DNA of 64,000 nt from Macrostomum hystrix (taxonomy: Eukaryota; Animalia; Platyhelminthes): assembly GCA_950097015.1 (NCBI GenBank), contig CATNEN010000007.1:6758001-6822000 (forward strand). The letters run 5' to 3'. How positions within the stretch are numbered: position 1 is the stretch's first letter; the number at the start of each line of letters is the position of its first letter. This document shows positions 14,398 through 61,670 of the stretch, piece after piece. The position numbers and the translations under genes were made by a program. Under the pieces are notes generated by a model. That model had not been told where the DNA came from. It was given only the letters and a program-made list of their open reading frames with translations, and ran no database searches.

Positions 14398-16577
14398 TTT
14401 CCCCGTTTTCCCGACTCGAGTTTTTCCTCTTCCCCGACGTAGCGTCCCCGAGCCAGCGGCTAAGGCTGAGAGAGACGCATCTCTGCGTTTCCGTGTTTTC
14501 CGCGTACTGCGTGACTCCGGCGGCCCCGCTGGCAAACCCTTGTGCGGCGTCCTGCAATAAACCTGAGACAGAGACCGAGACAGAGACAGAACCTGCGATA
14601 ATCCCCGTGATTCCATGGCGCAGCTTTGATTGGTTCAGCCCGTAAGTGCAATTCGTCAATGGTTTTATCTTAATTAGTCATCGCAAAAATGTTTCTTTTT
14701 GCGTATAAGTGCATACAGCATTACGTCCAGCACTATTCTTTGCTAAAAATATTAACAAGTTACTAAGGCAGTGAATTAGGATTGTTGCTTCTTTAAACTA
14801 ATGCAGGCTAGTGGGGTGTGTTGATGGCAGAAAAGCAGGGGTGTTGGTACCTTACTGTAAAGGTGGCATCACAAAAAGCAAATAGCGATTGGGAAAACAT
14901 TTATCAACTTTTAATCGACTTTAACACGACATGACCTAGCTTGACCTACCCAGACTGACTAGATTAAGAGTAGGGGACCTTGGGTGGTGTGGGCTTTGCC
15001 CCCTCCCAGAGGCTGCTTAGAAACTATCACACAGTCTCCTGCAACCGCATGAGAGGCATGAGCAATGTGTTACCGTAGTTGGACGGTTACAACATACCTT
15101 CAATATGGGCAGAGTTTGATCTCTGGTTTGGTGAATTCGGCTTCAATTATATTCTCAGTGCTTCGATGAACTACAGAAGGCTTAAAACTTTGTGCTTCCT
15201 GCGCATAGCGAAACTTGTCAAACTCGCATACGTGGCCGTTGATGCACCGTGCCATTCGTGAGGTGCTCTCAATGATCGACTGCAACAAGGGTTCAATTAC
15301 TTCGTCTTCATCTCCGTCGTTGTGATTGACGCAAACTGCCTGACCAGAGGTAACAGCTTTCTTCTAAAAGGTCAGCCAATAGTCGGACCCCATGATAGCA
15401 TCAAGCAGAGCAGTCTGTGCTTCCTGTTGTGTTGTTGCTCTAGCTAGGCGAAGAAGGCAGCTACCAATACGATATATACTAACATGTAACTAACTATATT
15501 TTCATATTAAGGAAACAAACTTCGATTTATTTTAATTCACTTCGATTCACCTCAATTTCCTTCTTATTTCTTACTGTTTCTCCAAAACTCAATTATATGG
15601 GACGAAGATGGTCGTCGTATTGCTGGCTCAAAGACAGTTTTCTTTAGTTTTTGCTGGCTAAAATGCATTACATTGAGCGGAGGTGAGGGAGTGCATTTAA
15701 ACGAAATGAAAGGATCGCGAAAAAAACTTTGATATTTTGGCAGTGATTCAATTTTAGAAATACGGTTAATTATAAAATTTATAAAGGATCTGCCTGAATT
15801 CTAAGATATTTATAAAGGCTTTATATAAGCCTTTTTTAGGGTGCGTTCGAGTAGCTTAAAATGACTTAAACTAAACTAAACAGTTGCTTTAGTGTAACTT
15901 TTTAAAACCGAGATAATTTTTATTAACATTTAATTGGGTATCCACTTTTTATTACGTTCTCTAGCATGAGAGCCCACTGACTGTTGTCTTTGCATTCATT
16001 TGGAAGCCCAGGTAATTCTATTCCTGGATGTATTCCAGGAAACACAATCAGTCAAAAGTCAAAACAATCACGCTCTCTGCTTAGGCCGTTAGGGAGTTAG
16101 TTGTAGCTTTGTTTTCTGGATATATTAACATAGTCTATTTTATGCTAATTTCTATTTTCTGGATAGCTATGACAGAATTATCAGACTGAGACTTTGTTTG
16201 GGCTTTTCTGCATTTCTATAACTCTACTGAATATTACTAAGTACGAGTAATTGCAGTAAAGAATACTATTTATCTCTTCATTCTGTATAAAAGTGCAACT
16301 ATAGAAAGTTATTGAGAATAGAAGTGAATGAATGGATCCATGTACAGATAAAATAATTATGGAAAAAGAGGGCAGCCTATTGGACTCTATGATGGGGTGG
16401 GCTTAGGTTCCCAATTTTTACTTTGAATTTTGCTTCTGAACACACGATTGCAAGTACCCGTGTAATATTTGGACCAACAATTATCTTTATCTCTATTCTT
16501 AGTTTAAAAAACGTTAGCGACATTTTACCGCACTGTTTATATCATGTTAAAAAACGCACTGTTTAACAAACCTTATT

Positions 16578-17253
16578 ATGCGGTAGACTATGCGGAATTT
16601 ACCGTACTGTTTAAATGACCTCATTTCAGGCTTGGACTATGCGGTAGACTATGCGGAACTTACCGCACTGTTTAAATGACCTCATTTCAGGCTTGGACTA
16701 TGCGGTAGACTATGCGGAATTTATATCACTGTTTAAATGACCTCATTTCAGGCTTGGACTATGCGGTAGACTATGCGGAATTTACCGCACTGTTTAAATG
16801 ACCTCATTTCAGGCTTGGACTATGCGGTAGACTATGCGGAACTTACCGCACTGTTTAAATGACCTTATTTCAGGCTTGGACTATGCGGTAGACTATGCGG
16901 AATTTACCGCACTGTTTAAATGACCTCATTTCAGGCTTGGACTATGCGGTAGACTATGCGGAATTTACCGCACTGTTTAAATGACCTCATTTCAGGCTTG
17001 GACTATGCGGTAGACTATGCGGAACTTACCGCACTGTTTAAATGACCTCATTTCAGGCTTGGACTATGCGGTAGACTATGCGGAATTTATATCACTGTTT
17101 AAATGACCTCATTTCAGGCTTGGAAAATGCGGTAGACTATGCGGAATTTATATCACTGTTTAAATGACCTCATTTCAGGCTTGGACTATGCGGTAGACTA
17201 TGCGGAATTTACCGCACTGTTTAAATGACCTCATTTCAGGCTTGGACTATGCG
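16578..17253. repeat. 61-bp subterminal tandem repeat of the MULE (~11 copies)
   Basis: Unit TTACCGCACTGTTTAAATGACCTCATTTCAGGCTTGGACTATGCGGTAGACTATGCGGAAT. It contains the TIR motif TTACCGC and inverted GCGGTA. Confidence 0.95.
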
Positions 17254-17861
17254 TAGGAGTGTCCGGTTTAACAGTGATAGATATATTTTAGCTTCGAATA
17301 TAAAGTCTGTGTAATTAGTCTTGTTGCATTGTGCACGTCGTTAACGAAAAAAACGTCCACAGCGAAAAATCGTCCAGAGCCAAAACAGTAAGTAAATAGT
17401 AACTGGATGCTGACGCAAGCCATATTACGGTACAAAAATCTATGCAATTAGTCAAGCCAGACTGAATTGCAAATGACGGAGCGACATTGAATTTGACGTA
17501 GTCAGTCAAGACGTACGGAGCAGCTCATCAAATCCTCCTGGCCTTGGTCCCTGTTGAGAAAGGGGATGTTCTAATATCAGCAACCGTCAATATCGGTGCC
17601 ACGGCCGTGTCAAGACCAAAGAATTTTTTACTCGCATTGCAGAATCTAAAAGCATAATCGAACTACTCACGTGTCTGCCCCGATACAGAAGTCGCACCGC
17701 CAAGTCGGCTGCTCCATTGACTCGAGAGATGAGATTTGCGCATGGCCGAACGCGCAAACCGTGTGGCACCACATGCGACACGAGTCACAAAAAATCTGTC
17801 GTGTGTAATGTATGTGGGCAATAGCTAGAAAGTGAAAATATTCACAATTGATGCAATCATT

Positions 17862-18116
17862 TATTAAGAAAGTCTTATTTAAGAATAGCAGACTCAGCGT
17901 TTATTTAGGACGGATTTAGAGAAGGATAAAGGGGTGAGACAATTAGGTAGCTCTGGCGTAGCTCAACAGAAGTTACAGGTACAGTTTGGAAATTTAGCAA
18001 TCTACCATAGATATAAAGCTTACTTAGATTCTAGAAAATTCTAGAAGGAAAACTTTAGGATTTACTTACTATTAATAGATGCAGCTATTTTTAAGATAAA
18101 CGATTACATATTAACA
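17862..18116 (-). repeat. Copia 3' LTR (TG...TA ends)
   Basis: Direct repeat of 22252-22506. Confidence 0.95.
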
Positions 18117-18223
18117 CTCCCACTTAATGTTTAGATTAAAAATTCTAATGCCAAACATACTTTTAATAAAGAGTTAGATGTCAGATCTGGAAGCAGTTAT
18201 CAGTTCAGTCTGAAATACTCGTA

Positions 18224-21200
18224 TTAACGAACGGGAATTAGTTCTTCAAGTAATTGAAACTTGGCATTCGACAGTGCTTTTGTAAGAATGTCAGCAACCA
18301 TTTCTTCAGACGGACAGTAAACTAGTCGTAAAGTTCCACTGACTAACTTCTCACGCACGAAATGGTGACGGATATCAATGTGCTTGGAACGACTGTGGTA
18401 GACAGGATTTTTCGCTAGAGCAATACAGCCTTGATTGTCTTCTAGGATAGTGGCACATCTGACAGTTTCTATGCGAAGATCCCGTAGTAATTGTTGTAAC
18501 CAAGTGGCTTCCTGAGTAGCAGCTGAGAGAGCCATGTACTCCGCCTCCGTTGTCGATAAGGCTACAGTTTGTTGCTTTTTGCTGCTCCAGCTAATCGGAC
18601 ATTCAGCCAACTTGAAGATGTATCCTGTAGTAGAACGACGGTCATTTTGATCTCCAGCCCAGTCTGCATCGGAATAGCCAATTAGGTCAATTTCGCGCGA
18701 GTCCTTCTGAAAAACTAATCCAGATGAAATCGTTCCTTTTAGGTACCTTAGGACACGCTTCACTCCACTCCAATGCTGTTCAGTTGGGTCTGAGCAGTAA
18801 CGCGCGAGAACTCCCACTGCAGCTGAAATATCTGGTCGTGTAGCTAATGCTGCATAGTTTAGACTTCCTACTGCGGCCTGATACATAGTTTTGTCCACCT
18901 TAGCATCGCAGTCTTGTGCAGTGTAGAACTTGACACTTGTATCCATTGGTGTTGATACCGGTTTACAGTTAATCATGTTGAATTTTGATAGGACACTATT
19001 TAAATAGCGTTCTTGGTTCAGAAACAAAGAGCCATTATTCCACGTAGCTTGAACTCCAAGAAAGTAGTGAAATTCGCCTAAGTCTTTCATTTTAAATTTC
19101 GATTGCAGTTCTTGCTTCAACACAAACATGTAATCATCAGAAGCGGTTAGCAAAATGTCGTCCACGTACACACCGATCGCAGATTGAGAGTTAGCATAAA
19201 TGCATGGTTCTGACTTTGCCTGCGTGAGGTTAAGACTTAAGAGTTCATCATGGAGCGTTTGATTCCAACATCGAGGTGCCTGTTTTAGTCCGTATAGACT
19301 TCTTTCAAGTTTGCATACTAGCGTTTCCTTGCCTTCAACCACAAATCCTTCCGGTTGTTCCATATAGATTTCCTCGTCTAGTTTGCCGTTTAGAAATGCT
19401 GTTACGACATCCATCTGGTGAATTTTCCAATCTCGTTGAATTCCAAGAGCTAGTAGAGTTCTGATTGATGTAAATCGAGCTACTGGTGCGTAAGTCTCCT
19501 CATAATCTACACCATGTTCTTGAGAGTATCCTTTAACAACCAATCTTGCTTTAAATCTATCTACTAAGTTGTCTGACTTGTACTTGACACGAAATACCCA
19601 TTTACAGCCAATAGTTTGACGTCCTTTAGGTAGTTCAACCAGTTTCCAGGTCTTGTTCTCCATCAGTGACTCATACTCGGCGTTTGCAGCCTCTTGCCAG
19701 TCTCTAGAAAAAGAGCTGTCCAATGCTTCCTTCAGAGTTTTTGGTTCTTCAATTTGTGTTGCCACAGATGCTACGTAACGGTCAACGGGCTTCTTATCTC
19801 GAGTTGATCTCCGAACTTCTTGTTTGTCGACATTTCCAGAAACACATTTGAAATCAGACGCTGCAGCTTCCGTATCTGCATTCAGTTGAAGTCTCTCCTG
19901 CTTCTCCGATACTTGTTTAACGAAGCACGACTCTTTGAACGTTACATCTCGACTAACGAACACGGTTTGTGTTTGGAAATCAAAACAGCGGTATCCTTTG
20001 GAAGTTTCCGAGTATCCAATAAATCTGACTTCCCGAGCTTTGGAGTCAAATTTGTGACGCCTTTCAGCCGGGACATGGGCGTAGGCAACGCATCCAAATA
20101 CTCGCAAATGCTGAACATTCGGCCTTTTACCAGTCCAAATCTGATATGGTATAGCTTTGTTGATTGCACTCGTTGATGACCGATTACGCAAATATGTTGC
20201 TGTAGAGATAGCTTCTGCCCAGAATTCTTTGCCAATATGAGCATGTGCAATCATTGTTCTTGCTGCCTCCACCAAGGTTCTGTTCATTCTCTCAGCTACT
20301 CCATTCTGCTCAGGAGAATGTGGGACTGTAGTTTGGTGAATGATTCCGTTTTTGACACAGAACTTTTCAAATTCTCTTGATGTATACTCTCCACCATTGT
20401 CTGTCCGTAGAATCTTGATAGACTTGCCTGTTTGATTCGTAACAAAAGCCTGAAAATTCTTGAATTTTTCAAAAACTTCTGACTTGTTTTTCATAAAGTA
20501 AACTGAGCAGTAGCGCGAGTAATCATCAATAAATGTGACAAAGTACTTCGATCCTCCAATGGATGTAGTTTGCATTGGACCACACACGTCACTGTGAATT
20601 AGACCCAATAGTTCGCTTGACCTTGACGCTACACCCTTGGTAAATGGCGTTCTATGTAGTTTTCCTTCTATACATGCCGTGCAGAAACTGATGCTTCCAA
20701 CTTTTGCGTCAATGCCGTCAACTTGCTTTTTATGAATTAGAGATTTTAGATCTTGCTCTCCTAGGTGACCATATCGCTGATGCCATAAATCTAAACTGTT
20801 GGTTTTCGCGATTGTTGCTGATTCAGTAGTAACAGAAATACCTTTGAGTTTGTACAATCTCCCAACTTTCAAAGCTTCTCCAGCAACTGTGCCTTTATTA
20901 TCTACAATCTGACACTTGTCATCGCTAAACTTGACACTGAACCCTTTTCTGGTGACAGCGGATACTGAAAACAGGTTTTGCTCCATGAGTGGGACGCACA
21001 GAACATCAGTCAACTTACACAATTTCATTTCAGAGCCGACGCTGATGTGCATCCTGATAATACCTTTTCCTGTAGCATTTAGTTTGTGACCATCTGCTAA
21101 CGAAATTTTCTCTTCCACTAGCAATTTCTGGAAATCCACAAAATTCGTACGATCATTGGTCATGTGATTAGTTGCGCCTGAGTCCACAATCCAAGTAGTA

Positions 21201-22099
21201 CTGATTGACTCCTTTGATGCGCCCAAAGACACTGCCGAAAATGCAGAATCTTCACCCGAAACATTGCTATCTTCTTTCCCTACGCTTTCTGGAAAGTCTG
21301 CAATCTTAGCCTGATGTTTCCGCCGATTTCTATTAAACTCTTGTGGTCTTGAACTTGTGCTAGTCGCACCTGTTACTGAGAGGCTGTTCTTATATTTGTA
21401 GCATTGCTTCTTTACGTGACCAGGCTTATTACAGAAAAAGCATACTTTCGGTCTGACACTCTGGTGCTGTTGCTTATTAAATCCAACCAGAGCCTTCGAG
21501 TTGCTGCTAGATCCACAGCTTTCCTGCTCAAGTCGTTTTGACTCCTCGTGCAAAAGCCGTTCGTGTACGAATTCCATCGTCAGGTCGTCCGCCCGCGATT
21601 CCAGAGCTGTAATCAACCCGTCATAAGACTTCGGCAAACTATTTAGCAAAATTGTGACTTGATAGTCTTCGGGAACACCTGCCCCGATAGCCGACAATCG
21701 TTTGACGATATCCTTGAGCTGATTAATATGCTCCTGCATGGATGCACCTTCCTCCATCTTGAGCGCCTGTAGTTTCCGATTTAGGAATAATTTATTTGCC
21801 AATGTACTTCGCTCGAAATGTGTTTTAAGCTTATTCCAGGCTTCCTTTGGAGTTTCTGCATCCTCAATGAGATGAATTTGACTATCTGCAACAGCCAATA
21901 CGATAGTTGCTAGGGCTTTATTCGCACGCCGATTGAAATGAACTTTGACCTCGTTGGTCGCGTCCTCAGCAAGTGTCTCGGTACCATTAACAACTTCCCA
22001 AAGTTCTCGCTCCATCAGAACGTTCTTCATCTTGAACTTCCAGATATTGTAGTTGGAACTATCCAACTTCTCAACCAGTGGCTTGGCATCGAAGGACAT
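18224..22099 (-). CDS. Copia gag-pol polyprotein (Gag, CCHC, PR, IN, RT, RNase H), 1291 aa
   Basis: Uninterrupted ORF with CFFCNKPGHVKKQC, WIVDSGATNHM, LWHQRYGH, IHSDVCGP, RTDNGGEY, QNGVAERMNRT, MDVVTAFLNG, SLYGLKQA, YVDDI, YSDADWAG and KHIDIRHH. Confidence 0.97.
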   Translation of the reverse strand: MSFDAKPLVEKLDSSNYNIWKFKMKNVLMERELWEVVNGTETLAEDATNEVKVHFNRRANKALATIVLAVADSQIHLIEDAETPKEAWNKLKTHFERSTLANKLFLNRKLQALKMEEGASMQEHINQLKDIVKRLSAIGAGVPEDYQVTILLNSLPKSYDGLITALESRADDLTMEFVHERLLHEESKRLEQESCGSSSNSKALVGFNKQQHQSVRPKVCFFCNKPGHVKKQCYKYKNSLSVTGATSTSSRPQEFNRNRRKHQAKIADFPESVGKEDSNVSGEDSAFSAVSLGASKESISTTWIVDSGATNHMTNDRTNFVDFQKLLVEEKISLADGHKLNATGKGIIRMHISVGSEMKLCKLTDVLCVPLMEQNLFSVSAVTRKGFSVKFSDDKCQIVDNKGTVAGEALKVGRLYKLKGISVTTESATIAKTNSLDLWHQRYGHLGEQDLKSLIHKKQVDGIDAKVGSISFCTACIEGKLHRTPFTKGVASRSSELLGLIHSDVCGPMQTTSIGGSKYFVTFIDDYSRYCSVYFMKNKSEVFEKFKNFQAFVTNQTGKSIKILRTDNGGEYTSREFEKFCVKNGIIHQTTVPHSPEQNGVAERMNRTLVEAARTMIAHAHIGKEFWAEAISTATYLRNRSSTSAINKAIPYQIWTGKRPNVQHLRVFGCVAYAHVPAERRHKFDSKAREVRFIGYSETSKGYRCFDFQTQTVFVSRDVTFKESCFVKQVSEKQERLQLNADTEAAASDFKCVSGNVDKQEVRRSTRDKKPVDRYVASVATQIEEPKTLKEALDSSFSRDWQEAANAEYESLMENKTWKLVELPKGRQTIGCKWVFRVKYKSDNLVDRFKARLVVKGYSQEHGVDYEETYAPVARFTSIRTLLALGIQRDWKIHQMDVVTAFLNGKLDEEIYMEQPEGFVVEGKETLVCKLERSLYGLKQAPRCWNQTLHDELLSLNLTQAKSEPCIYANSQSAIGVYVDDILLTASDDYMFVLKQELQSKFKMKDLGEFHYFLGVQATWNNGSLFLNQERYLNSVLSKFNMINCKPVSTPMDTSVKFYTAQDCDAKVDKTMYQAAVGSLNYAALATRPDISAAVGVLARYCSDPTEQHWSGVKRVLRYLKGTISSGLVFQKDSREIDLIGYSDADWAGDQNDRRSTTGYIFKLAECPISWSSKKQQTVALSTTEAEYMALSAATQEATWLQQLLRDLRIETVRCATILEDNQGCIALAKNPVYHSRSKHIDIRHHFVREKLVSGTLRLVYCPSEEMVADILTKALSNAKFQLLEELIPVR

Positions 22100-22239
22100 A
22101 GTGTCGATCCACCAACACAGCTGGTTGTTGAGCTGAACTTTCTAAGAGACGGTAGATGAGAACAATCACGCCGACTGACGCACTGCCACTAGAGCAGCTT
22201 TAGTGCTCAAACTGCAGCAGATCGCAGTGGAAGGGCGCA

Positions 22240-22251
22240 GGGCCCATAACC
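22240..22251 (-). other. Primer-binding site GGTTATGGGCCC (copia-type, internal half of tRNA-iMet)
   Basis: Lies immediately 3' of the 5' LTR. Same motif as the Drosophila copia PBS. Confidence 0.85.
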
Positions 22252-22506
22252 TATTAAGAAAGTCTTATTTAAGAATAGCAGACTCAGCGTTTATTTAGGA
22301 CGGATTTAGAGAAGGATAAAGGGGTGAGACAATTAGGTAGCTCTGGCGTAGCTCAACAGAAGTTACAGGTACAGTTTGGAAATTTAGCAATCTACCATAG
22401 ATATAAAGCTTACTTAGATTCTAGAAAATTCTAGAAGGAAAACCTTAGGATTTACTTACTATTAATAGATGCAGCTATTTTTAAGATAAACGATTACATA
22501 TTAACA
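22252..22506 (-). repeat. Copia 5' LTR
   Basis: Direct repeat of 17862-18116. Confidence 0.95.
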
Positions 22507-24396: not shown

Positions 24397-24535
24397 TGTC
24401 ACGGGGTTTCGGCAATAGCTTGCGGTCACGCAGGTAAGAGTTTCGTGGAGCAGGGCGCCTTCTTCTCCACCCGTCACCGGTTAGAGAGTGTGGCCTGCAA
24501 CCCGGAATCCCGCGTTTCCGGCCATACCTGGGAGG
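24397..24535 (+). mobile_element. Possible LTR-start fragment (TGTCACGGGG...) of a second element, abutting the Gypsy truncation
   Basis: Starts with TGTCAC exactly where MULE coding sequence resumes. Not matched to the Gypsy LTR. Confidence 0.35.
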
Positions 24536-27106
24536 CCCTATAGTCTATGCATAGACGTTGAGTCCCGTCCTTTTTCTTGACGAGGACAATAGGCGAGACC
24601 CAATCTGAGTCACATTCTTCTATGACTCCTTGCTCGAGCATTTGTGCTATATGTTGGTCTAGAAACTCCTTTTGATTCGGCGTGGTACGCCGCGATGGTT
24701 GCGTTATTGGCCTGGCTTTAGGATCGATGAGTTCTATTCCCATCTCATGCATGTGAGTGTGGCCTAGATCATTATTGTCTTGTGATATTTGGCTTCGGAA
24801 ATAGTTAAGCAGGCGCAGTGTTGTAGCTAATTGAGTTGTGGTGAGTTTGGATTTGTCTAGTTGAAACTGATTGATCAGCCAGTTCGCCAGCTGGGCAGTT
24901 AGAGCTGGTAGCTTACTGATTTGCTGAGTTAGATTGGCTGTATTATCGATACTGAAGTCAGACTCTCTTAGTGTAGTCTGGACTATTACCTCCCGTTGGC
25001 TAAGTTCTTGGAAGGAGGCCACTTCTTGGCCCCTTTTGATGTGAATTGGTGTTTCCCGCAGTTCAGTACCCGTACAAGTACATGATCAGTGTCGCTGACT
25101 GCATCGATGGTTCTGGCTAATTGTTCAGATCTTGTATTGAATAGTGTTGGCATGATCATCCCTTGTGCATGCGGTGTTGAATCGAGTACTCGACTTGGTA
25201 TTAAGGTTTCTGCTCGTGGCGGCAGCTCAATGGAACTGGCTGCTAGCACACGGCGAACTTGGAAGGTTTCTTTTATCTCCCTCAATGATTTGCACCGATG
25301 TACCGGCTACCGTAGCGCAACTTGAGTTGAAATCTAACATTATTTGGAAGCTACGTAGGAAGTCCATGCCCAGAAGGGCTTCGGCAGTGGCATCAGCCAT
25401 TACTAGAAATACATGTGTCTTAGTTATTTCTCCTAGTTTAATTTCGCAACGCAATGATCCTAGGATCTCGGTTGTGGATCCATTGAAAGCTGTTGCCTTT
25501 CTGGTGTAAGTACTAGGTACAAATACATTGTTGATTGGATCTGCGGCGACTAATCTATCTTTTACTTTTACACCCATAGCGCTAGCAGTGGCACCAGAGT
25601 CTAAGCAAGCTAGTATTTTAGAATCACCTACTTCTAGTTGCACGAAATAGCTAGATTCAAATTTGTCTGGAATAGCATCCCAATGTCTACATTGAGGATC
25701 GCCATCCTTCGGTTGGTGTTGTACATTATAAGCCTTATCGTGTTGGCGACCGGGGTCTACCTGTCTCTGGTAGCACACCCTAGTTCCCACCAGACGATGC
25801 TGATCGGCTAGCTGTCTTAATTCAGGTGAGAGCTGGCTGCCGTGGACGAACAGTTGTTCTGGCAGCTGTTCGGATTGGATGAACCCAAAGTTTGATGACC
25901 AAGAAGCTATGGTCCCGATCTCCGTGAGACCTGATTCACGGATCGGTTTCGAACCTTGGTTCCCCTTATTTGGATTAGGAGGAATGATTCTAGGCGGCGA
26001 TGAAGGGCAGTCGGCGACCAAGTGGCCTGTCCGACCGCATCTATGACATGCCCGAGGAGGGCGAGAGTTGATCTGTGGCTGATAATAAGGGCGTTCTCTC
26101 TTCGGCGAGAGATTACGCAGCGGCTGAGCAAGGCGACGCCTTGGCGGTGAGAGATTATTCTGCGTAGTCTGATACATACGTTCTATCTGTTGCACGGGTG
26201 GCAACCTAGTCTGGTCAGCTCGTTTAATTTCCTCAGCTTGTTGGTGAACTAACCTTTCTAATTCAGCGACACGCTGTTCCATAGCCCTTTTTCGGCATCT
26301 GGTTCAGCGGTGCGAATTCTGGCTATAGTAGATGGCATATTTAGGAGCTGGTAGACCCCAACGAGGTCCTTGGCTTTCCGCATGAGTTCTTCAGCCGAGG
26401 CAGCACTATATGTCTCTTGATCCCACAAGAGGAGCTTTTCGGCAAGCCCCTTGTCACGTAGGCCATGACAGAACCGAGCTTTGATCAGGGGTTTCGCTTC
26501 GGTGAGCGAGAGACCCGCTAATCTGGTATACGAGACTAATCTATCGAAGAACTCGGACATAGGTTCCGAATGGCTTTGAGAAGCAGCAACTAATTCGACA
26601 TATGCCTTATCCTTTTGCTTGGAATCCGTGTACCTTTCCCTAAGCACACGAATGGCGGATTCGAATGGCAATTGGTCACAGCGGTAGTTGAGGAAGACTT
26701 CCTGACACTCGGGTGCCAGTAGAGATACTAGGACAGCAGAGCGCTGGTCCTCTGGGACACGGCAGGTGGCTAGATATGACATGAACTGAGCCTCCCAAGT
26801 GTCAAATTTCATCTTGGGATTGAAAGCCGGTGGCGGCCGAAGGCGAATCTCAGGTTGCTTCGGTACAAATGACGGCGAGGAGTTATCTAGGCTGGATGTC
26901 GCCGGTGAGTGGACAGTAAGACGAGCCTCTATCATCTTATGAAGAGAAGTCGGAGTCTGAGCAAGCAAGACGTGCTCACTGACATCGACAGCGCCCTCAG
27001 GCTGATCGGTGGACCCTATGGAATTTACTTCGGCAGGGTCGGCATCAATTTCGCCTCCACCGAGTTGTGGTGGGGCTTGGACCTGATCGTCGCCGTTATC
27101 GGACAT
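24535..27106 (-). pseudogene. Gypsy gag-pol: capsid-like region, coiled coil, CCHC knuckle, cold-shock domain, aspartic protease, RT start; frameshifted
   Basis: PPPAFNPKMKFDTWEAQF, Q..SEPMSEFFDRL, RFCHGLRD; CHRCGRTGHLVADC (26007-26048); CSD at ~25718-25925; LDSGAT..LLGMDFL; SDWVSPIVLVKKKDGTQRLCIDYR. Confidence 0.9.
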
Positions 27107-28540: not shown

Positions 28541-30097
28541 ACGTCACAACTGGTTATCAATGTCTGCATGAACTTGCTCCAAAGTTCGTCTCTTCATTGA
28601 CTCAAAGTATTCAAAGTATGGTGATGATCTCATAATGCCTTCATCATCATTACAAAGGGACAACTCTGCAGGTTCATCTACCTTTGGTGATGTGGTCCAA
28701 TAGTCTGCCAAAATTCTCTGTTCAGATAGAAGCAGCTGGGACTGAAGAGTTTGAATCTCCTCATTTATATCCACAAACGACCAGGAGAGAAAAATTTTGA
28801 AAATTTTATTTATCCACCGCATCGCATCCTGTTGTGAGCTCGCGTACTGAACCAGCACAAATAATTTCACAAACAACTCCCTCGGTCCTTTTTTCATATT
28901 GAGGCGATTAGCTGTGCGACACATTTGGTGAATCAGATGGTTGCTACACAGAAAAACTCCAAATTTTATTTCCGACGGCTTGCTGTTGTTAAAAATTGGA
29001 AATGGTTCCTAAGGTACGTAGAGATGTTTATATGATGAAAATCAAGGCATGAATGAATTTGTGCCCACGAAAAATCAGACACAAAGAGGATTGGAAGGCG
29101 CGAAGATTCACTGAACGAGCTTGATAACTTCAAGAGAGAATGTCGAACCTGCTTTAGGAAATGAGAAACAGACGCTACGTCATGTCTGTTCGTCAAACAA
29201 TTGGCCACGGAAATGGCATTAATTGTATCTTCCGCTGTCGTAACAAGAGAATACAGGAACGTTGCACCAGGAATAGACGCTTCCTTTGTTAAAGATCCAG
29301 TGGAATCTATGTGCAGAACGGCATGCCCATGTCGAGAGATTAGAGAAATAATGAACTGGATTTCTTTGTGAGAAAATAATGTTAGCCTGAACGGATCCAT
29401 AGGGCGTTCGTGTATGATTCCAGGTAGCAATTCATGTGTGTAAATGCTGACGTATACCTCCTTCAGAATTGCCAGTTCAACCTCGAAGATAGCATGTAGC
29501 CTTTCAGATTGTTTAATTATAGATTTGATGTTCCGCATTACATTCAACGTTTTGCAGGAATCGAAATTTTTTGAAAGTAGATATGCACGATTAGATTCGT
29601 CGTTCACATTCTGCCTGTGTGTCTCTCTAGAGCCAATTGTTCGTACGTCTTCAGCGAATCTATTAAACTCATCTAACGTTGTGCGTCTAAATCGACTGAA
29701 TTCCGATTTTGAGTGGTCAAATGCGCCATCGACACAGATGCGAAAGCGCATCCCGCCGTTCAGGACAGTAGGAGGTCGGTCAATTATAAATGTATACCGT
29801 CGCTCACAACCGTCGATCTTACAGTTCGCTTTGACCGTCCAAAACTTTGAGTTCACAGATAAATCACACAGCCCCTCTTCTACTGTAAAAAAACTACACA
29901 GGCTGATTTATAAGCCCGCGAAGATCAATTGCCTTGAATTCATTGCGAGCTGATGTCAAGCTGCACTAGCTCGCAAAAATACACTACGGAGATACGAAAC
30001 ACACTTTAACATTGAATAACCCGCAGACGCTTTCATGAATCAGTCTGAAATTTTACACATCCAATCAACTCGATTGCATCAGAGGTTTTGTAACTTT

Positions 30098-33000
30098 TCA
30101 TTGCGATTGATGCAGTAGAAGTGTCTGCCTGCGAATGTCAAGCTGGCTCCCAACAACAACAACAACAAAGGACGACAACCCAAGGCCGAAGCCAGAGGGG
30201 CTGCCGTCAGCATGCGCAAGAGCAGAGTGGCGCAGAATTGTCAGTCCACGAGGGTCAGAGATCTCAGCGTCAGTCAATAGCAGTTCAGGATAGCGTAGCG
30301 CCCTCGCCTGACCACGCCGCCGGGGCCCCTGCAGGGAAAGCAGCAGCACGTCCTGCAGTGGCTCGGGGCAGCGCTGCTCCGCACGGATGACGTGGCCAGC
30401 CAGCTGCAGGCGCCGGATGCGCAGCAGCTGACTTGGCCGGCAGAGCTGGGCCCGGCGATAGAGCTCATCGTTGCTGGTGTTGGTGACGGCAGTCGGCGAA
30501 TAGTGGACGCCGAAGGCGGCTCGCAGGAGTCCGGCGTGGGCGGCATCGAGTTGCTTCTCCTGTGTGCCGTTCAGAGTCCACGTTTGAGCGTTGTAGAGAA
30601 AGACGGTCTCTATGACGGCTTGAAACAACCGCCCTCTCAGCCGATCCGGCAGCGTGGGGCACTGCAGGACAGTCCGCAGGGTGCGAAAGGCTGCCCAGGC
30701 AAGCGCCCTGCGTCGCGCCATGTCGTCCAGGATGTCGGGCACTTGACCGCCGAGATAGATGAAGGTCTCGCAGCGCGGCAGCAATGCCGCTTGCCCATTT
30801 ACGCTGTGGCAGAGGATCTCGCCGTTGAGGTCATTTGGGACGGTCAGCACCATTGTTTTCTTGGTGTTCACGGACAGCCCGACCATTGCCGCCGCCGCAG
30901 TCAGCTTGTCCAGCAGATGCTGAGCACCTTCGATTGAGCTGGACAGCAGCGCCAGGTCGTCCGCGTACGCCAGGACAGAGAGTCGTCTTTCGGGGTGTCG
31001 GCTGCTTGTCCTGCGACAGAGCAGAAAGCCGTTGGCGTCGTCAGGGAGGCCAGTGCGCAGCACCCAGTCCAGGACCAGGACGAACAGAAAGGGGGCGAGT
31101 GTGTCGCCCTGCAGCACACCGGAGGTCGTGTCGAAGAAATCGGATAGGCCGTCCGGCGTCACAACTGCCGCCCTGGTCTCCTGGTACAGGGCCATCACAG
31201 CCGTTACCAGCTGCTCAGGCACATGGTACGCGCGCAGGATCTTCGGGATGACCCGTCTCGACACCGAGTCGAAGGCCTTTAGAAAATCCACGAAGATGCA
31301 GATGACCGCCGACTGGTGGATACGGGTCTCTTCTAAAATGCGGCGCAAAGCGAGAATCTGATTCACCGTGCCCCTACCTGGCCGGAAGCCGTTTTGCTCT
31401 CGCCGGAGGAACGGGTCCAACACAGGTTGCAGCCGCGTCAGCAGCACCCTGTTGTACAGCTTCGCGGCGCAGGACATTAGGGATATTCCGCGATGCTCTT
31501 CGACCTTGACAGTTCCGGGCTTCTTCGGGATCCCGACGATGTGCGCCGTCCGCCATTCAGCGGGGGCGGGACCTCCCGCCAGCACGCAGTTCATCACTTG
31601 CGTGACTTCTTGCGCCACCAGCGGGAGGCGCAACACTTCGACAGGCACGTCATCGGGTCCGGTGGCTTTGCCGCCCGGTGTCTTCTTAGCGAGCAGAAGC
31701 ACCTCGTCAATGGTGATAGGACTGGTGTTGAAAGAGCTTTCTTCTGGCAGTGCGACCTCTGCGGGCAGTGACATGTCGTCTCTTGGCGGCGGTGGAGACG
31801 CGTTAACGATGCCAGAGAAAAAGGCTTTTAGTTCGTTTCGCCTCTCTTCGGGCGTGTCACCAGACAGGTTCAGCGTACTGCGCCGTTTACGGCCTGTCAA
31901 TTGGTTTACAACAGACCAAACAGCACGGGGCTTCTTGTCGGGGCCGGCGTCAGTAATTTCTTGAATTGCGGCCTCAACAGCGGCGCGTTGCCGGGCCTTA
32001 AAAACCTCTGCTAAGGCTTTCTCAGCTTCCTCCGCAGGCTGTCCGCTCCTCCGCAGTCTTTCCACAGTTTGCCGGGCCTGTCGCAGCGCCTCGTCGTTTT
32101 GCCATACAGGCTGACCGCTTGCTACTGGTTTCACCAGAGGCAGCGTTTTAGTAGCGGCAGCCTGGACAGCGCTGCTGACGTCCGAGTATTTGGCAGGTGC
32201 TGCTGGTTCCGGTCGTTTGTCTAGCGCGTCGGCAAAGGCCAGGCAGAAACGGCCTCTTGTGCTTGGGTCGCGCAAGGCGCGGAAAAAGCGCTTTGGCTGC
32301 CGCTTCGGTGGTCGGTATAGTGGGTGCCTAAGGCGCAGTTCACAGTAAAGCAGTCTATGGTCAGACCGAATTGCCAAAGGTGCCACCGTGTCGCAGTTGA
32401 CTGCACGGCGCCGTTCCCGCCAGCGGATTAGAATGTGGTCCAGCTGTGCGAGTCTTTTTGTGGCAAACTTTCCACTGGCGTTCCGGGTCGGGCGCTTGCA
32501 TCCAGTGAACGTTGCCAGTCTCACAGCTGGTTTCCTAAAGAGAGTGTTCGCTGAGACCAGATCGTGCCGGTCCACGAAATCCATTAGTGCATCGGTGTTG
32601 TTGTTTTCGCGCGGGGTGACAAAGAGAGCTCGTTCAGATTTTCGCATAACAGCGTTGAGGTCTCCAAGCACCAGCACTGAGTCACGCTGAGCAACCGCCT
32701 CCAGTTGCGCCGAGAGGAACTCCAGAAATTGACGGTGCTCCGTCGGGTGCGCAGCTGTGGGTGCATAGGCACAGAATAAGTGAATATTACGGGTGCGGAG
32801 ACGAAGGTCGACTCGTAGTAGTCTTGGCGATAAGCTTTCGCATCGAAAACATTTCTGTAGCCGTGGGCTGGTGAGGACACCAACTCCTCCTCGGCCTTTT
32901 GCGTCTGCTGAAGTGAACTGAAGGAGCCAGCCGCCACCGAGGTGCTCCTGATGGAGCCCAGGATCGGTTTTAATAGATAGCTCCTGCAGCATTACAATGT

Positions 33001-33373
33001 CTAGTTGCAGATCGGTAGCTAATTTTGCCAGTAGATGTTGCCTCCAACCTGCTCGCAGAGTCCGGCAGTTCCAAGTCGCGACTCTTAGTTGTTGTTTCTG
33101 TTTATGCAGCGTGCAATTTGGTTCAGCTTGGATCCGTTGGTTGTGGACCTCTAGGTCCCCGGCGCCACCCGGAGGAACCGTACCACTGCGCATAGAGGTT
33201 CTGCCAGCAGTGCGACGCTCGCGGGCACGGTGTCGGCCACGGCAGTTTCGCTCGCGGCGTCGTTCAATACGCCGACGCACACTGCGTTGTCCTCGTCTGC
33301 AGGGTGGTGTGCCGCTCTTGGCAGCCGCAGCAGGTGCGCGGCTCTCCGTTGAGGCCTTGGTACGCAATTCCAT
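30098..33373 (-). CDS. RTE APE endonuclease-reverse transcriptase (~1090 aa; first ATG at 33373)
   Basis: ATWNCRTL, LQE, AYAPT, GDLNA, QLDHIL, SDHRLL; GKATGPDD, RGISLMS, QNGFRPGRGT, FVDFLKAFDSV, GVLQGDTLAPFLF, YADD. No internal stops. Confidence 0.93.
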   Translation of the reverse strand: MELRTKASTESRAPAAAAKSGTPPCRRGQRSVRRRIERRRERNCRGRHRARERRTAGRTSMRSGTVPPGGAGDLEVHNQRIQAEPNCTLHKQKQQLRVATWNCRTLRAGWRQHLLAKLATDLQLDIVMLQELSIKTDPGLHQEHLGGGWLLQFTSADAKGRGGVGVLTSPRLQKCFRCESLSPRLLRVDLRLRTRNIHLFCAYAPTAAHPTEHRQFLEFLSAQLEAVAQRDSVLVLGDLNAVMRKSERALFVTPRENNNTDALMDFVDRHDLVSANTLFRKPAVRLATFTGCKRPTRNASGKFATKRLAQLDHILIRWRERRRAVNCDTVAPLAIRSDHRLLYCELRLRHPLYRPPKRQPKRFFRALRDPSTRGRFCLAFADALDKRPEPAAPAKYSDVSSAVQAAATKTLPLVKPVASGQPVWQNDEALRQARQTVERLRRSGQPAEEAEKALAEVFKARQRAAVEAAIQEITDAGPDKKPRAVWSVVNQLTGRKRRSTLNLSGDTPEERRNELKAFFSGIVNASPPPPRDDMSLPAEVALPEESSFNTSPITIDEVLLLAKKTPGGKATGPDDVPVEVLRLPLVAQEVTQVMNCVLAGGPAPAEWRTAHIVGIPKKPGTVKVEEHRGISLMSCAAKLYNRVLLTRLQPVLDPFLRREQNGFRPGRGTVNQILALRRILEETRIHQSAVICIFVDFLKAFDSVSRRVIPKILRAYHVPEQLVTAVMALYQETRAAVVTPDGLSDFFDTTSGVLQGDTLAPFLFVLVLDWVLRTGLPDDANGFLLCRRTSSRHPERRLSVLAYADDLALLSSSIEGAQHLLDKLTAAAAMVGLSVNTKKTMVLTVPNDLNGEILCHSVNGQAALLPRCETFIYLGGQVPDILDDMARRRALAWAAFRTLRTVLQCPTLPDRLRGRLFQAVIETVFLYNAQTWTLNGTQEKQLDAAHAGLLRAAFGVHYSPTAVTNTSNDELYRRAQLCRPSQLLRIRRLQLAGHVIRAEQRCPEPLQDVLLLSLQGPRRRGQARALRYPELLLTDAEISDPRGLTILRHSALAHADGSPSGFGLGLSSFVVVVVGSQLDIRRQTLLLHQSQ

Positions 33374-33732
33374 TGTTGGAGCAGGAATTGGCACCAGGAG
33401 GCGGCGGCGCTATTCAAACGCAGTAGCGTTTAAATAGACTGCAACTTTAAATAGACTGCAACTTTAAATAGACTGCAACTTTAAATAGACTGCAACTTTA
33501 AATAGACTGCAACTTTAAATAGACTGCAACTTTAAATAGACTGCAACTTTAAATAGACTGCAACTTTAAATAGACTGCAACTTTAAATAGACTGCAACTT
33601 TAAATAGACTGCAACTTTAAATAGACTGCAACTTTAAATAGACTGCAACTTTAAATAGACTGCAACTTTAAATAGACTGCAACTTTAAATAGACTGCAAC
33701 TTTAAATAGACTGCAAATAGACTTGAAATTTT
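30154..33732 (-). mobile_element. RTE-clade LINE, full length
   Basis: 10-bp TSD TGGCTCCCAA (30144-30153, 33733-33742), 3' (TTG)n tail and a single EN-RT ORF. Confidence 0.9.
33429..33715. repeat. 17-bp tandem array (TTAAATAGACTGCAACT)n forming the RTE 5' end
   Basis: About 17 perfect copies inside the TSD-bounded element. Confidence 0.95.
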
Positions 33733-34699
33733 TGGCTCCCAAAAATACACTACAGAGATACGAAACACACTTTAACATTGAATAACCCGCAGACGCTTTC
33801 ATGAATCAGTCTGAAATTTTACACATCCAATCAACTCGATTGCATCAGAGGTTTTGTAACTTTTTATTGCGATTGATGCAGTAGAAGTGTCTGCCTGCGA
33901 ATGTCAAGCTGGCTCCCAAAAATACACTACAGAGATACGAAACACACTTTAACATTGAATAACCCGCAGACGCTTTCATGAATCAGTCTGAAATTTTACA
34001 CATCCAATCAACTCGATTGCATCAGAGGTTTTGTAAATTTTCATGGCGATTGATGCAGTAGAAGTTACTTTTTGAAAGTACAAGAAAATACACTGCGGAG
34101 ATAGGAACAAACTTCAAAGCTGTGTAATTCTTTTATGCATTGACAAAAATATATTATATTTATTTTGGAACGTTATATTAGTTGCATCAGAAGATCGTGT
34201 AAGTTTCGCTGTAATTGAATGGTTATTTTTTAAGTTACAATACTCTTGTTTGAATGTGAATGTGAATGTCAATTGGGAAATTAATACGTGTAAAGTTAGC
34301 GGTTTTTACCGCGCGGTAAAATGTCGCTAACGTAAATCACAAACGTTTTTTCAACTTGCTTTTCTATTTTTCTGCTAGGCCCCTATTATTGTATTTGTAT
34401 TTTCAAATAGTAATTTTCATAGGAATAATTTTGCTATATCTTTATGTGCATCTATGTGTTGATATTCTACAACTTGCAAAGTGCTAGCTGTCTTATTATA
34501 GCACTTGTGATATATTTGGCCTAATATTTTAGCTAATAATAGCTTATTCTAGAGGTTGAACCTGATTGTGAATTTGTGAATTCATGTCCCTTTTTATGAA
34601 TGTGATTTCTCAATACTGGTTCATGATTAGGCCTAGTAAAATTTCCTTTCTTCATGAAATCATTTGATGTCTAACTTCCTCTATGTAATTCTGATATTT

Positions 34700-60212: not shown

Positions 60213-60524
60213 CGCCCCGATTGGCCAACGGTCGCATCCGTGAGATAGCTAATCAGTCACTGGGGTCTGGTGGCGCAGGCTCTGGTAGACTCTTATGAAT
60301 GCCAGCACAAAGCTTGGGATTCTCCTGTGTGTTCTTTAGATGGGTCCGGCTTTCGCAGAGTTCTGCTACCGACTTCTTCCCAAATGCATGCTCTCCCATC
60401 TAATGGCCTCAAGATCTTCAGGTTGCGACACCGCCAATGTCAAAATCTTTCAGGTCGGGCCACTGCTAATACCCCAATATCCTCAGGTCAGGCCCCATAT
60501 CACACCAATATTCCAATATCTTCA

Positions 60525-61670
60525 GCTTAGGCTCCCATATTATCCCACCAATATCCCATTATCCTTATGCTAGGCTCCCATATTATCCCACCAATGTCCC
60601 ATTATCCTCTCGTTAGGCTCCCATATTATCCCACCAATATCCCATTATCCTTATGCTAGGCTCCCATATTATCCCACCAATATCCCATTATCCTTATGCT
60701 AGGCTCCCATATTATCCCACCAATATCCCATTATCCTTATGCTAGGCTCCCATATTATCCCACCAATATCCCATTATCCTTATGCTAGGCTCCCATATTA
60801 TCCCACCAATATCCCATTATCCTTATGTTAGGCTCCAATATTATCCTAAAAATATCCCACTATCCTTATGTTACGCTCCCATATTATCCCACCAATATCC
60901 CATTATCCTTCTGTTAGGCTCCCATATTATCCCACCAATGTCCCATTATCCTTATGCTAGGCTCCCATATTATCCCACCAATATCCCATTATCCTTATGC
61001 TAGGCTCCCATATTATCCCACCAATGTCCCATTATCCTTATGCTAGGCTCCCATATTATCCCACCAATATCCCAATATCCTTATGTTAGGCTCCAATATT
61101 ATCCTAAAAATATCCCACTATCCTTATGTTAGGCTCCCATATTATCCCACCTATATCCCATTATCCTTCTGTTAGGCTCCCATATTATCCCACCAATGTC
61201 CCACATCCTTATGCTAGGCTCCCATATTATCCCACCAATATCCCATTATCCTTATGCTAGGCTCCCATATTATCCCACCAATATCCCATTATCCTTCTGT
61301 TAGGCTCCCATATTATCCCACCAATGTCCCATTATCCTTATGCTAGGCTCCCATATTATTCCACCAATGTCCCATTATCCTTCTGTTAGGCTCCCATATT
61401 ATCCCACCAATATCCCATTATCCTTATGTTAGGCTCCCATATTATCCAAAAAATATCCCATTATCCTTCTGTTAGGCTCCCATATTATCCCACCAATGTC
61501 CCATATTATCCCACCAATATCCCATTATCCACTCGTTAGGCTCCCATATTATCCCACTAATGTCCCATATTATCCCACCAATATCCCATTATCCACTCGT
61601 TAGGCTCCCATATTATCCCACCAATGTCCCATATTATCCCACTAATGTCCCATATTATCCCACCAATATC
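60525..61670. repeat. 43-bp minisatellite (TAGGCTCCCATATTATCCCACCAATATCCCATTATCCTTATGC)n
   Basis: Tandem copies. Confidence 0.95.

What the first reader, a model, noticed from the sequence alone, without database searches (positions are those of the whole stretch)
25718..26048. Gypsy Gag with a cold-shock domain fused between the CCHC knuckle and the protease (Lin28-like RNA-binding module in a retrotransposon)
Seen: in one frame of ORF 25227-26282 the knuckle CHRCGRTGHLVADC is followed by EIGTIASWSSNFGFIQSEQLPEQLFVHGSQL...VGTRVCY...DKAYNVQ and then the LDSG protease. Known: G..(W)...FGFI (RNP1) plus LFVH.S (RNP2) plus VG..V.F/Y and A.NV is the cold-shock OB-fold signature. The short beta1-beta2 spacing resembles CSDE1/Unr domains. 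CSD plus CCHC is the Lin28 and plant CSP combination, here in reverse order. Standard Ty3/Gypsy nucleocapsids have only CCHC. Inference: a retrotransposon lineage captured a CSD as a nucleocapsid extension. It might act in RNA chaperoning or packaging, translational control, or interference with host let-7/small-RNA pathways. I do not know of this being described.
Basis: partly seen in the sequence, partly recalled or inferred. Interest (0 to 1): 0.9.

Follow-up and report, generated by a model that had tools for sequence, protein, structure and literature searches.

The report
Flatworm Gypsy retrotransposon carrying a cold-shock domain
A broken copy of a Ty3/Gypsy retrotransposon, whose only relatives found are in the flatworm Macrostomum lignano, really does carry a cold-shock RNA-binding domain between its zinc knuckle and its protease; nearly intact relatives keep the domain, which is unusual for this element class, though bird retroviruses have a published precedent.

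Summary
On the minus strand, ORF 25230-26282 encodes one CCHC knuckle (26007-26048), a 70-residue cold-shock domain (CSD, 25716-25925) and a DSG aspartic protease (25332-25649).

- **The domain is real.** The window copy hits Pfam CSD at E 2.6e-5, just under the curated cut-off. An AlphaFold model built with a 20-sequence alignment has mean pLDDT 85.5. Its best solved-structure match is Drosophila Unr CSD1 (TM 0.83).
- **It belongs to a lineage.** Two diverged Macrostomum lignano polyproteins (65% and 48% identical) have the same knuckle-CSD-protease order. One of them belongs to a group of copies 98-99% identical to each other, two with complete 1879-residue Gag-Pol ORFs.
- **It is conserved.** The CSD is 51-77% identical between lineages and its flanking linkers 10-55%. 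The nucleic-acid-binding aromatic residues and histidine are kept.
- **The window copy is dead.** It has three frame breaks and ends early in reverse transcriptase.

The most likely role is an extra single-stranded-RNA binding and chaperone module of the nucleocapsid. This is inferred, not tested. It is not a Lin28 relative. I found no description of a CSD in Ty3/Gypsy, but bird endogenous retroviruses are reported to have captured CSDs repeatedly. I call it a new variant of a known kind, of moderate interest.

The parts
26261..27106 (-). Gag (capsid-like) ORF of the element, 282 aa
   Evidence: ORF. Weak Pfam PNMA (E 7e-4) and DUF1759 hits. It is 80% identical to P0001 residues 162-349 and 48% identical to P0002 residues 36-267.
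26283..26290 (-). First frame break, between the gag frame and the knuckle-CSD-protease frame. The relatives read straight through here.
   Evidence: Three-frame translation, sequence and tblastn of P0001 and P0151. The break lies at a short homopolymer run, so an assembly error is not excluded.
25230..26282 (-). ORF encoding an N-terminal spacer, the CCHC knuckle, the cold-shock domain and the aspartic protease (351 aa)
   Evidence: Residues 1-337 align with P0001 352-670 (E 1e-116) and P0002 272-599 (E 4e-80).
26001..26054 (-). Single CCHC zinc knuckle (nucleocapsid), residues 77-94
   Evidence: Pfam zf-CCHC at E 1.2e-5 and 25.6 bits, above the cut-off of 20.8. Motif coordinates.
25926..26000 (-). 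Pro/Gln/Asn-rich linker between knuckle and CSD, poorly conserved
   Evidence: 10-29% identity between the three lineages. Low pLDDT at the model's N-terminus.
25716..25925 (-). Cold-shock domain, residues 120-189: five strands with a short helix between strands 3 and 4
   Evidence: Pfam CSD E 2.6e-5. AlphaFold model with mean pLDDT 85.5. Foldseek top hits are all CSDs, the best being Unr CSD1 4qqb_X at E 8e-6 and TM 0.83. 51-77% identity between lineages. W128, F134, F145 and H147 are invariant.
25332..25649 (-). Retropepsin-type aspartic protease, residues 212-317, with active site LDSGA at 25590-25604
   Evidence: Pfam gag-asp_proteas, Asp_protease_2 and Asp_protease at E 1e-7 to 4e-7, all above their cut-offs. 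Coordinates.
25061..25273 (-). Protease-to-RT linker piece, read in another frame after the second frame break at about 25273
   Evidence: It aligns with P0002/P0151 residues 599-670 (57% identity) and P0001 residues 670-732. Frame change seen.
24534..25022 (-). Pre-RT region and first residues of reverse transcriptase, after a third frame break within 25023-25060. Homology stops at about 24534, so the rest of RT, RNase H and integrase are missing.
   Evidence: 66% identity to P0002 residues 684-846. No other piece of this family occurs in the window.

Best explanation
The window holds a dead, 3'-truncated copy of a Ty3/Gypsy-type LTR retrotransposon family. The only relatives found are in the flatworm Macrostomum lignano. 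In this family the Gag-Pol polyprotein carries a genuine cold-shock domain (CSD) between the single CCHC zinc knuckle of the nucleocapsid and the protease.

An ancestor of the family acquired the domain once. The nearest cellular CSDs are the eukaryotic Unr/CSDE1-like, multi-CSD type. The domain has been kept under constraint in at least three diverged lineages, including one with young, full-length copies.

Most likely mechanism (inferred): the CSD is an added single-stranded-nucleic-acid binding and chaperone module of the nucleocapsid region. Its aromatic and histidine platform would bind and melt single-stranded RNA or DNA. It would work beside the one zinc knuckle, possibly in place of the second knuckle that many relatives have. 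The processes it would serve are genomic RNA selection and packaging, primer annealing and strand transfer during reverse transcription.

Shown here: presence, position, fold, conservation and retention of the binding residues. Inferred: RNA binding, chaperone activity, and on which side of the CSD the protease cuts.
For: **The domain is a CSD**
- Pfam CSD hits on each of the three proteins separately: the window at 24.5 bits, P0001 at 29.2 bits (above the cut-off of 27) and P0002 at 21.8 bits.
- An HMM of the three element CSDs hits 5-11 repeats per multi-CSD protein at 20-33 bits each. Summed E reaches 5e-39 at a database size of 1.8e9.
- AlphaFold model with mean pLDDT 85.5, five strands and one helix.
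- The listed Foldseek PDB hits are almost all CSDs (one eIF5A OB fold among them). The best is Unr CSD1, with TM 0.83 and rmsd 1.8.

**It is a family feature**
- P0001 (1336 aa) and P0002 (1760 aa) both show gag, CCHC, CSD and PR in that order. P0002 continues through RT, RNase H and integrase. P0001's model lacks an RT match but has integrase.
- The seven proteins of the P0002 group are 98.3-99.4% identical to each other. Two have full 1879-residue ORFs. Only two substitutions fall in the CSD across all members.

**It is under constraint**
- The CSD is 77, 55 and 51% identical in the three pairwise comparisons. The linkers are 41, 17 and 12% identical (Fisher one-sided p of 3e-5 to 9e-5). The protease is 72, 65 and 61% identical. 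There are no indels inside the CSD.
- W128, F134, F145 and H147 are invariant, and position 132 is F or Y. From established knowledge of CspA and CspB, these are the RNP1/RNP2 positions that stack on bases.
Against: - No binding or chaperone assay exists.
- The structure model relies on an alignment made mostly of CSD proteins, so the fold is partly imposed by that alignment. Those proteins were, however, found by significant sequence similarity. The single-sequence model was uninformative (pLDDT 39).
- The window copy alone is below the Pfam cut-off and is itself non-functional.
- Only one species is represented among the relatives. No relatives were found in metagenome or viral contigs or in further protein searches.
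- LTRs were not found for this copy.
- The protease cleavage sites are unknown. The CSD could end up on the nucleocapsid, as a separate peptide, or on the protease.
Confidence: 0.7

Rival explanations
1. The CSD is kept by selection, but not as a packaging or chaperone part of the nucleocapsid. It would instead act as a regulator. Options are control of translation of the element's own single-ORF Gag-Pol mRNA (as Unr/CSDE1 CSDs do on cellular and viral mRNAs), modulation of protease activation as an N-terminal extension, or interference with host RNA pathways (small RNAs, let-7-type precursors).
For: - The closest solved structures and sequence neighbours are Unr/CSDE1-type CSDs, which are translational regulators.
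- In the P0002 lineage Gag and Pol are one ORF, so the usual frameshift control of the Gag:Pol ratio is absent.
- The CSD lies directly upstream of the protease, behind a poorly conserved linker.
Against: - Nothing specific ties it to Lin28. The Lin28 knuckle model scores 15 bits against a cut-off of 27, the order is reversed and there is one knuckle.
- The position next to the CCHC knuckle is where nucleic-acid-binding modules of Gag normally sit.
- No data on targets.
Confidence: 0.2
2. The CSD is a neutral passenger: a piece of host mRNA copied in by template switching that hitch-hikes without any role.
For: - Retroelements do pick up host sequence. The bird ERV survey lists many one-off host domains (PMC12287698).
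- The window copy is dead.
Against: - Three lineages only 46-63% identical overall keep it without a single indel, at 51-77% identity, while the flanking linkers fell to 10-55%.
- All base-stacking residues are retained.
- It is kept in young full-length copies.
Confidence: 0.07
3. Artefact. Either the resemblance to a CSD is chance, or the architecture is a gene-model or assembly chimera of a host CSD gene with a transposon.
For: - The window hit is below the Pfam cut-off.
- P0001 and P0002 are automatic gene models.
Against: - Three proteins give separate Pfam CSD hits.
- There is strong multi-repeat homology to CSD proteins.
- In the raw window DNA the knuckle, CSD and protease lie in one uninterrupted ORF of 351 codons, with no room for an intron or a join.
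- The same junctions recur in seven M. lignano proteins that were each recorded on one contig.
Confidence: 0.02

Closest known systems
Ty3/Gypsy (Ty3/Mdg4, Metaviridae) LTR retrotransposons of Macrostomum lignano, surveyed in PMC12801592
   Same: Gag with a CCHC knuckle, a DSG protease, then RT, RNase H and integrase in that order in the full-length relative P0002. The relatives come from that flatworm.
   Different: Standard elements have only one or two CCHC knuckles between capsid and protease. Here a 70-residue CSD is inserted. The M. lignano LTR survey does not mention 'cold' or 'CSD'. The clade within Ty3/Gypsy was not determined here.
Bird endogenous retroviruses carrying captured cold-shock domains (Mol Biol Evol 2025, PMC12287698)
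   Same: These are reverse-transcribing LTR elements that acquired Pfam PF00313 CSDs. There are 46 ERVs, the domain was captured several times, and the authors read this as possibly adaptive.
   Different: They are Retroviridae of vertebrates, not Ty3/Gypsy of a flatworm. The CSD position varies among those ERVs. Here the position is fixed (knuckle-CSD-protease) across diverged lineages with intact copies. Homology between the two sets of CSDs was not tested, because no sequences were available.
CSDE1/Unr and protist multi-CSD proteins
   Same: They are the closest CSD type by structure (Unr CSD1 4qqb_X, TM 0.83) and by sequence. They share the short beta1-beta2 spacing and a helical stretch between strands 3 and 4.
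   Different: Those proteins have 5-11 CSDs and no retroelement domains, while the element has one CSD. The best single-domain score is only 33 bits at about 30-39% identity, so no donor can be named. The named top hits are dinoflagellates (Effrenium voratum, Gymnodinium smaydae). This may only reflect how many CSD repeats those organisms have.
Lin28 and plant CSD/glycine-rich CCHC proteins
   Same: The same two kinds of RNA-binding module (CSD and CCHC knuckle) occur on one polypeptide. From general knowledge, the two modules grip adjacent single-stranded RNA segments.
   Different: The order is reversed, with one knuckle instead of two or more and a 25-residue disordered linker. The Lin28-specific knuckle model is far below its cut-off. 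This is an analogy, not membership.

Membership tests
Cold-shock domain (Pfam PF00313, OB fold) | Match to the family profile at or above the curated score | tested here: met
   P0001 scores 29.2 bits against a cut-off of 27. The window copy scores 24.5 bits (E 2.6e-5) and P0002 21.8 bits (E 1.8e-4), both just below the cut-off. So the feature is met for the lineage and is sub-threshold for this copy taken alone.
Cold-shock domain (Pfam PF00313, OB fold) | Five-stranded antiparallel beta-barrel | tested here: met
   The AlphaFold model has strands at model residues 11-20, 23-28, 34-38, 59-66 and 73-80, with core pLDDT of 89-96. The Foldseek PDB hits are CSDs. Caveat: the alignment used for the model consists mostly of CSD proteins.
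Cold-shock domain (Pfam PF00313, OB fold) | RNP1-like (G-F-G-F-I) and RNP2-like (F-V-H) motifs with the upstream Trp | tested here: met
   The window has W128, NFGFI at residues 131-135 and LFVH at residues 144-147. W128, F134, F145 and H147 are invariant in the three lineages, and residue 132 is F or Y.
Cold-shock domain (Pfam PF00313, OB fold) | Binds single-stranded RNA or DNA | not testable with these tools
   Needs a binding assay with purified protein.
Ty3/Gypsy LTR retrotransposon (Metaviridae) | Gag with a CCHC knuckle followed by a D-S/T-G aspartic protease | tested here: met
   Pfam zf-CCHC and three aspartyl-protease models score above their cut-offs in the window ORF.
Ty3/Gypsy LTR retrotransposon (Metaviridae) | Pol order protease, RT, RNase H, integrase | tested here: met
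   This is met in the relative P0002: RVT_1 at 831-991, RT_RNaseH_2 at 1054-1156, Integrase_H2C2 at 1439-1488 and rve at 1505-1594. The window copy ends in the first residues of RT at about 24534, so it shows only the start of this order.
Ty3/Gypsy LTR retrotransposon (Metaviridae) | Long terminal repeats and a primer-binding site | tested here: inconclusive
   No direct repeat flanks this copy, and no second copy of its upstream region occurs in the window. A simple primer-binding-site pattern found nothing. This is expected for a 3'-truncated copy. DNA of the intact relatives could not be fetched.
Lin28 family | N-terminal CSD followed by two CCHC knuckles of the Lin28 type | tested here: not met
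   The order here is knuckle then CSD, and there is one knuckle only. Pfam Lin-28A-like_zf-CCHC_2 scores 15.1 bits against a cut-off of 27.
CSDE1/Unr family | Several tandem CSDs with the interspersed CSDE1-type domains (PF23456) | tested here: not met
   There is a single CSD and no PF23456 hit in the window ORF, P0001 or P0002. Only the type of CSD resembles Unr.

The most novel reading that the evidence does not exclude
The CSD is not just extra nucleocapsid glue. It would be a Unr-like translational or RNA-fate regulator built into a retrotransposon. Examples are driving or timing translation of the element's own single-ORF Gag-Pol RNA, possibly in response to temperature or stress, or sequestering host regulatory RNAs. 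The knuckle-plus-CSD pair would then be a convergently assembled Lin28-type RNA clamp used by a selfish element.
Probability: 0.1. Interest if true: 0.8.

Novelty: new variant of a known kind. Interest (0 to 1): 0.55.

Why it matters
Nucleocapsid regions of LTR retroelements are thought to rely on CCHC knuckles and basic stretches. A lineage that added a second, unrelated RNA-binding fold and kept it through substantial divergence gives a natural experiment. It can show what limits RNA packaging and chaperoning in these elements.

Together with the repeated CSD captures reported in bird retroviruses, it suggests that CSDs are a recurrently useful acquisition for reverse-transcribing elements.

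M. lignano is a transgenic-capable model with heat-inducible LTR elements (PMC12801592), so the question can be addressed experimentally. The practical stakes are modest, because this is a refinement of transposon biology and not a new kind of system.

Tried and rejected
- **Single-sequence AlphaFold** of the knuckle-plus-CSD stretch was uninformative (pLDDT 39).
- **NCBIfam scan** of the CSD stretch gave no hit.
- **Three word-indexed protein searches** found no new relatives: the CSD region within the 351-aa length range, P0002 residues 335-465, and the whole 351-aa ORF.
- **Scans of metagenome and viral contigs** with a three-sequence alignment gave pattern matches, but none was confirmed.
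No DNA of the other copies could be fetched, so there is no dN/dS, no LTRs of the intact relatives and no insertion ages.
- **Exact look-up of six window-encoded proteins** found none in the collection, so the source species could not be confirmed.
- **Other copies in the window:** none.
- **tRNA genes or a primer-binding-site pattern** to fix the 5' end: none.
- **Supplements of the two key papers** are not held.
- **BFVD structure search** found only phage and giant-virus Csp-like proteins and no retroelement protein.
- **Rejected: a Lin28 relationship.** It fails the membership features.
- **Rejected: a programmed frameshift at the gag/ORF2 junction.** Both relatives read through as one ORF, and two further frame breaks occur in this copy.
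- **Rejected: BEL/Pao assignment.** There is only a weak DUF1759 hit and no Peptidase_A17. RT_RNaseH_2 and Integrase_H2C2 are present.
Full report
**What is in the window**

The window is a transposon-rich eukaryotic region and is not human. It holds:
- an intact Copia element;
- a LINE-type ORF with an endonuclease and RT;
- a Helitron fragment;
- several satellite arrays.

The finding lies on the minus strand. A gag ORF (26261-27106) is followed by a 351-codon ORF (25230-26282) that overlaps it by a few codons in another frame. This second ORF encodes, in order:
- one CCHC knuckle (26007-26048);
- a Pro/Gln-rich linker;
- a second linker;
- an aspartic protease with LDSGA at 25590-25604.

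**Is the stretch a cold-shock domain?**

Yes. The evidence is as follows.
- Pfam PF00313 matches residues 125-188 at E 2.6e-5 and 24.5 bits, just below the curated 27 bits. Knuckle and protease models flank it.
- phmmer against PDB sequences is weak (E 0.085), but the top hits are CSDE1/Unr CSDs.
- The exhaustive phmmer scan of 1.84 billion representatives returned many proteins with 4-10 matched stretches for this part of the query. Pfam shows these to be multi-CSD proteins.
- An HMM built in a script from the three natural element CSD segments hits each of their 5-11 repeats at 20-33 bits. Summed E-values reach 5e-39 at that database size.
- A single-sequence AlphaFold run failed (pLDDT 39). 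With a 20-row alignment (the window segment, two element relatives and 17 multi-CSD proteins) the model reached mean pLDDT 85.5. It has five strands and a short helix between strands 3 and 4.
- Foldseek against the PDB lists almost only CSDs. The best are Drosophila Unr CSD1 (4qqb_X, E 8e-6, TM 0.83, rmsd 1.8 Å) and human CSDE1 CSDs, followed by CspA, CspB, YB-1 and CRHSP-24.

The caveat is that the alignment partly imposes the fold on the model. The independent Pfam hits on three proteins do not share that weakness.

**Is it a feature of a transposon lineage?**

Yes. Two polyproteins match the whole ORF, and both are from Macrostomum lignano.

| Protein | Length | Identity to window ORF | E-value |
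|---|---|---|---|
| P0001 | 1336 aa | 65% | 1e-116 |
| P0002 | 1760 aa | 48% | 4e-80 |

- Both have gag, CCHC, CSD and protease in the same order. In P0001 the CSD hit is above the Pfam cut-off (29.2 bits).
- P0002 continues through RT, RNase H and integrase, the Ty3/Gypsy order.
- P0002 stands for seven proteins that are 98.3-99.4% identical. Two of them are complete 1879-residue Gag-Pol ORFs, and only two substitutions fall within the CSD across all members. This is a young and probably recently active family.

No further relatives turned up in three more protein searches or in metagenome and viral contig scans. The known range is therefore one flatworm species, plus the window's unconfirmed source. 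I could not confirm that source, because exact look-ups of the window's proteins found nothing.

**Is it constrained?**

Percent identity in a three-way alignment:

| Region | window vs P0001 | window vs P0002 | P0001 vs P0002 |
|---|---|---|---|
| CSD (no gaps) | 77 | 55 | 51 |
| Protease | 72 | 65 | 61 |
| Knuckle | 80 | 50 | 60 |
| Linker before the CSD | 29 | 24 | 10 |
| Linker after the CSD | 55 | 10 | 15 |

- The excess of the CSD over the linkers is significant in each pair (one-sided Fisher p of 3e-5 to 9e-5).
- W128, F134, F145 and H147 are invariant, and residue 132 is F or Y. From established work on CspA and CspB, these are the positions that stack on bases.

**State of the window copy**

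The copy is a relic. The relatives read gag and the rest as one ORF, but here the frame changes three times:
- near 26283-26290;
- at about 25273;
- within 25023-25060.

Homology then stops in the first residues of RT at about 24534. No other piece of the family occurs in the window. All three frame breaks lie at short homopolymer runs, so some may be assembly errors. The truncation is not. No LTR could be assigned.

**How it most likely works**

The CSD sits where Gag proteins carry their nucleic-acid-binding modules, beside a single knuckle, and it keeps the binding platform. The best-supported reading is an added single-stranded RNA/DNA binding and chaperone module of the nucleocapsid. It would serve packaging, primer annealing and strand transfer.

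This is an inference from position, fold and conservation. I rate the whole statement at 0.7. The structural part is near certain and the functional part is about 0.6.

The rivals are:
- a regulatory role of the Unr kind (0.2);
- a neutral passenger (0.07);
- an artefact (0.02).

**Origin of the domain**

No close donor was found. The best single-domain match is 33 bits. The named top hits are dinoflagellate multi-CSD proteins (Effrenium voratum, Gymnodinium smaydae). This may simply reflect their many repeats. A host Unr/CSDE1-like source is plausible but not shown.

**Comparison with what is known**

It is not a Lin28 or CSDE1 family member, since defining features were tested and not met. 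It resembles them only in module content and CSD type.

Seven full-text searches found no description of a CSD in Ty3/Gypsy elements. A dedicated study of M. lignano LTR elements does not mention one. However, a 2025 survey of bird endogenous retroviruses reports Pfam CSD in 46 proviruses of two major groups. The domain was captured several times, at varying positions (PMC12287698).

Capture of a CSD by an LTR retroelement therefore has a precedent. What is new here is the element class, the fixed position between the nucleocapsid knuckle and the protease, and retention across diverged lineages with intact copies. I rate it a new variant of a known kind, with interest 0.55.

**Constraints observed**

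- The broken pieces were searched separately.
- I say where the copy is broken but not how it could be restored.
- The in vivo test that would alter an intact element is listed under referred steps.

Noticed in passing
window 17862-22506 (minus strand): An apparently intact Ty1/Copia element. It has a 1291-aa ORF with gag, protease-like barrel, integrase and RVT_2, flanked by 255-bp LTRs that are 100% identical (17862-18116 and 22252-22506). This suggests a very recent insertion.
   Followed up: partly
window 29969-34099: A LINE-type ORF of 1098 aa (30098-33394, minus strand) with an Exo_endo_phos endonuclease and RT. It is bracketed by 188-nt direct repeats (29969-30156 and 33735-33922, 98% identical, with a third copy at 33912-34099). 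A perfect 17-bp tandem array lies at 33361-33785. The layout could reflect tandem LINE copies or an unusual terminal structure.
   Followed up: no
window 16455-17364: A satellite array with a 61-bp period and about 15 units, mostly 95-98% identical, just outside the Copia LTR.
   Followed up: no
window 10073-10957 (minus strand) and 6961-7716 (plus strand): A Helitron_like_N fragment (E 1e-46) and a separate RVT_1 fragment. These are further transposon debris.
   Followed up: no
window 28544-29856 (minus strand): Two adjacent ORFs of 296 and 126 aa with no Pfam match, lying between the Gypsy fragment and the LINE. Their nature is unknown.
   Followed up: no
window 60001-62000: A 2-kb block with very strong negative GC skew (-0.41), unlike the rest of the window.
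   Followed up: no
window 26283-26290, about 25273 and 25023-25060: All three frame breaks of the Gypsy fragment lie at short A or G homopolymer runs. The pattern fits long-read indel errors as well as real mutations.
   Followed up: partly
proteins P0003, P0007, P0031, P0106 and others (not in the window): The nearest cellular CSDs belong to protist proteins with 5-11 tandem CSDs. Two of the named sources are dinoflagellates. Many share a conserved 'L-P-P-E-L-R' helical stretch between strands 3 and 4, like the element's CSD.
   Followed up: partly
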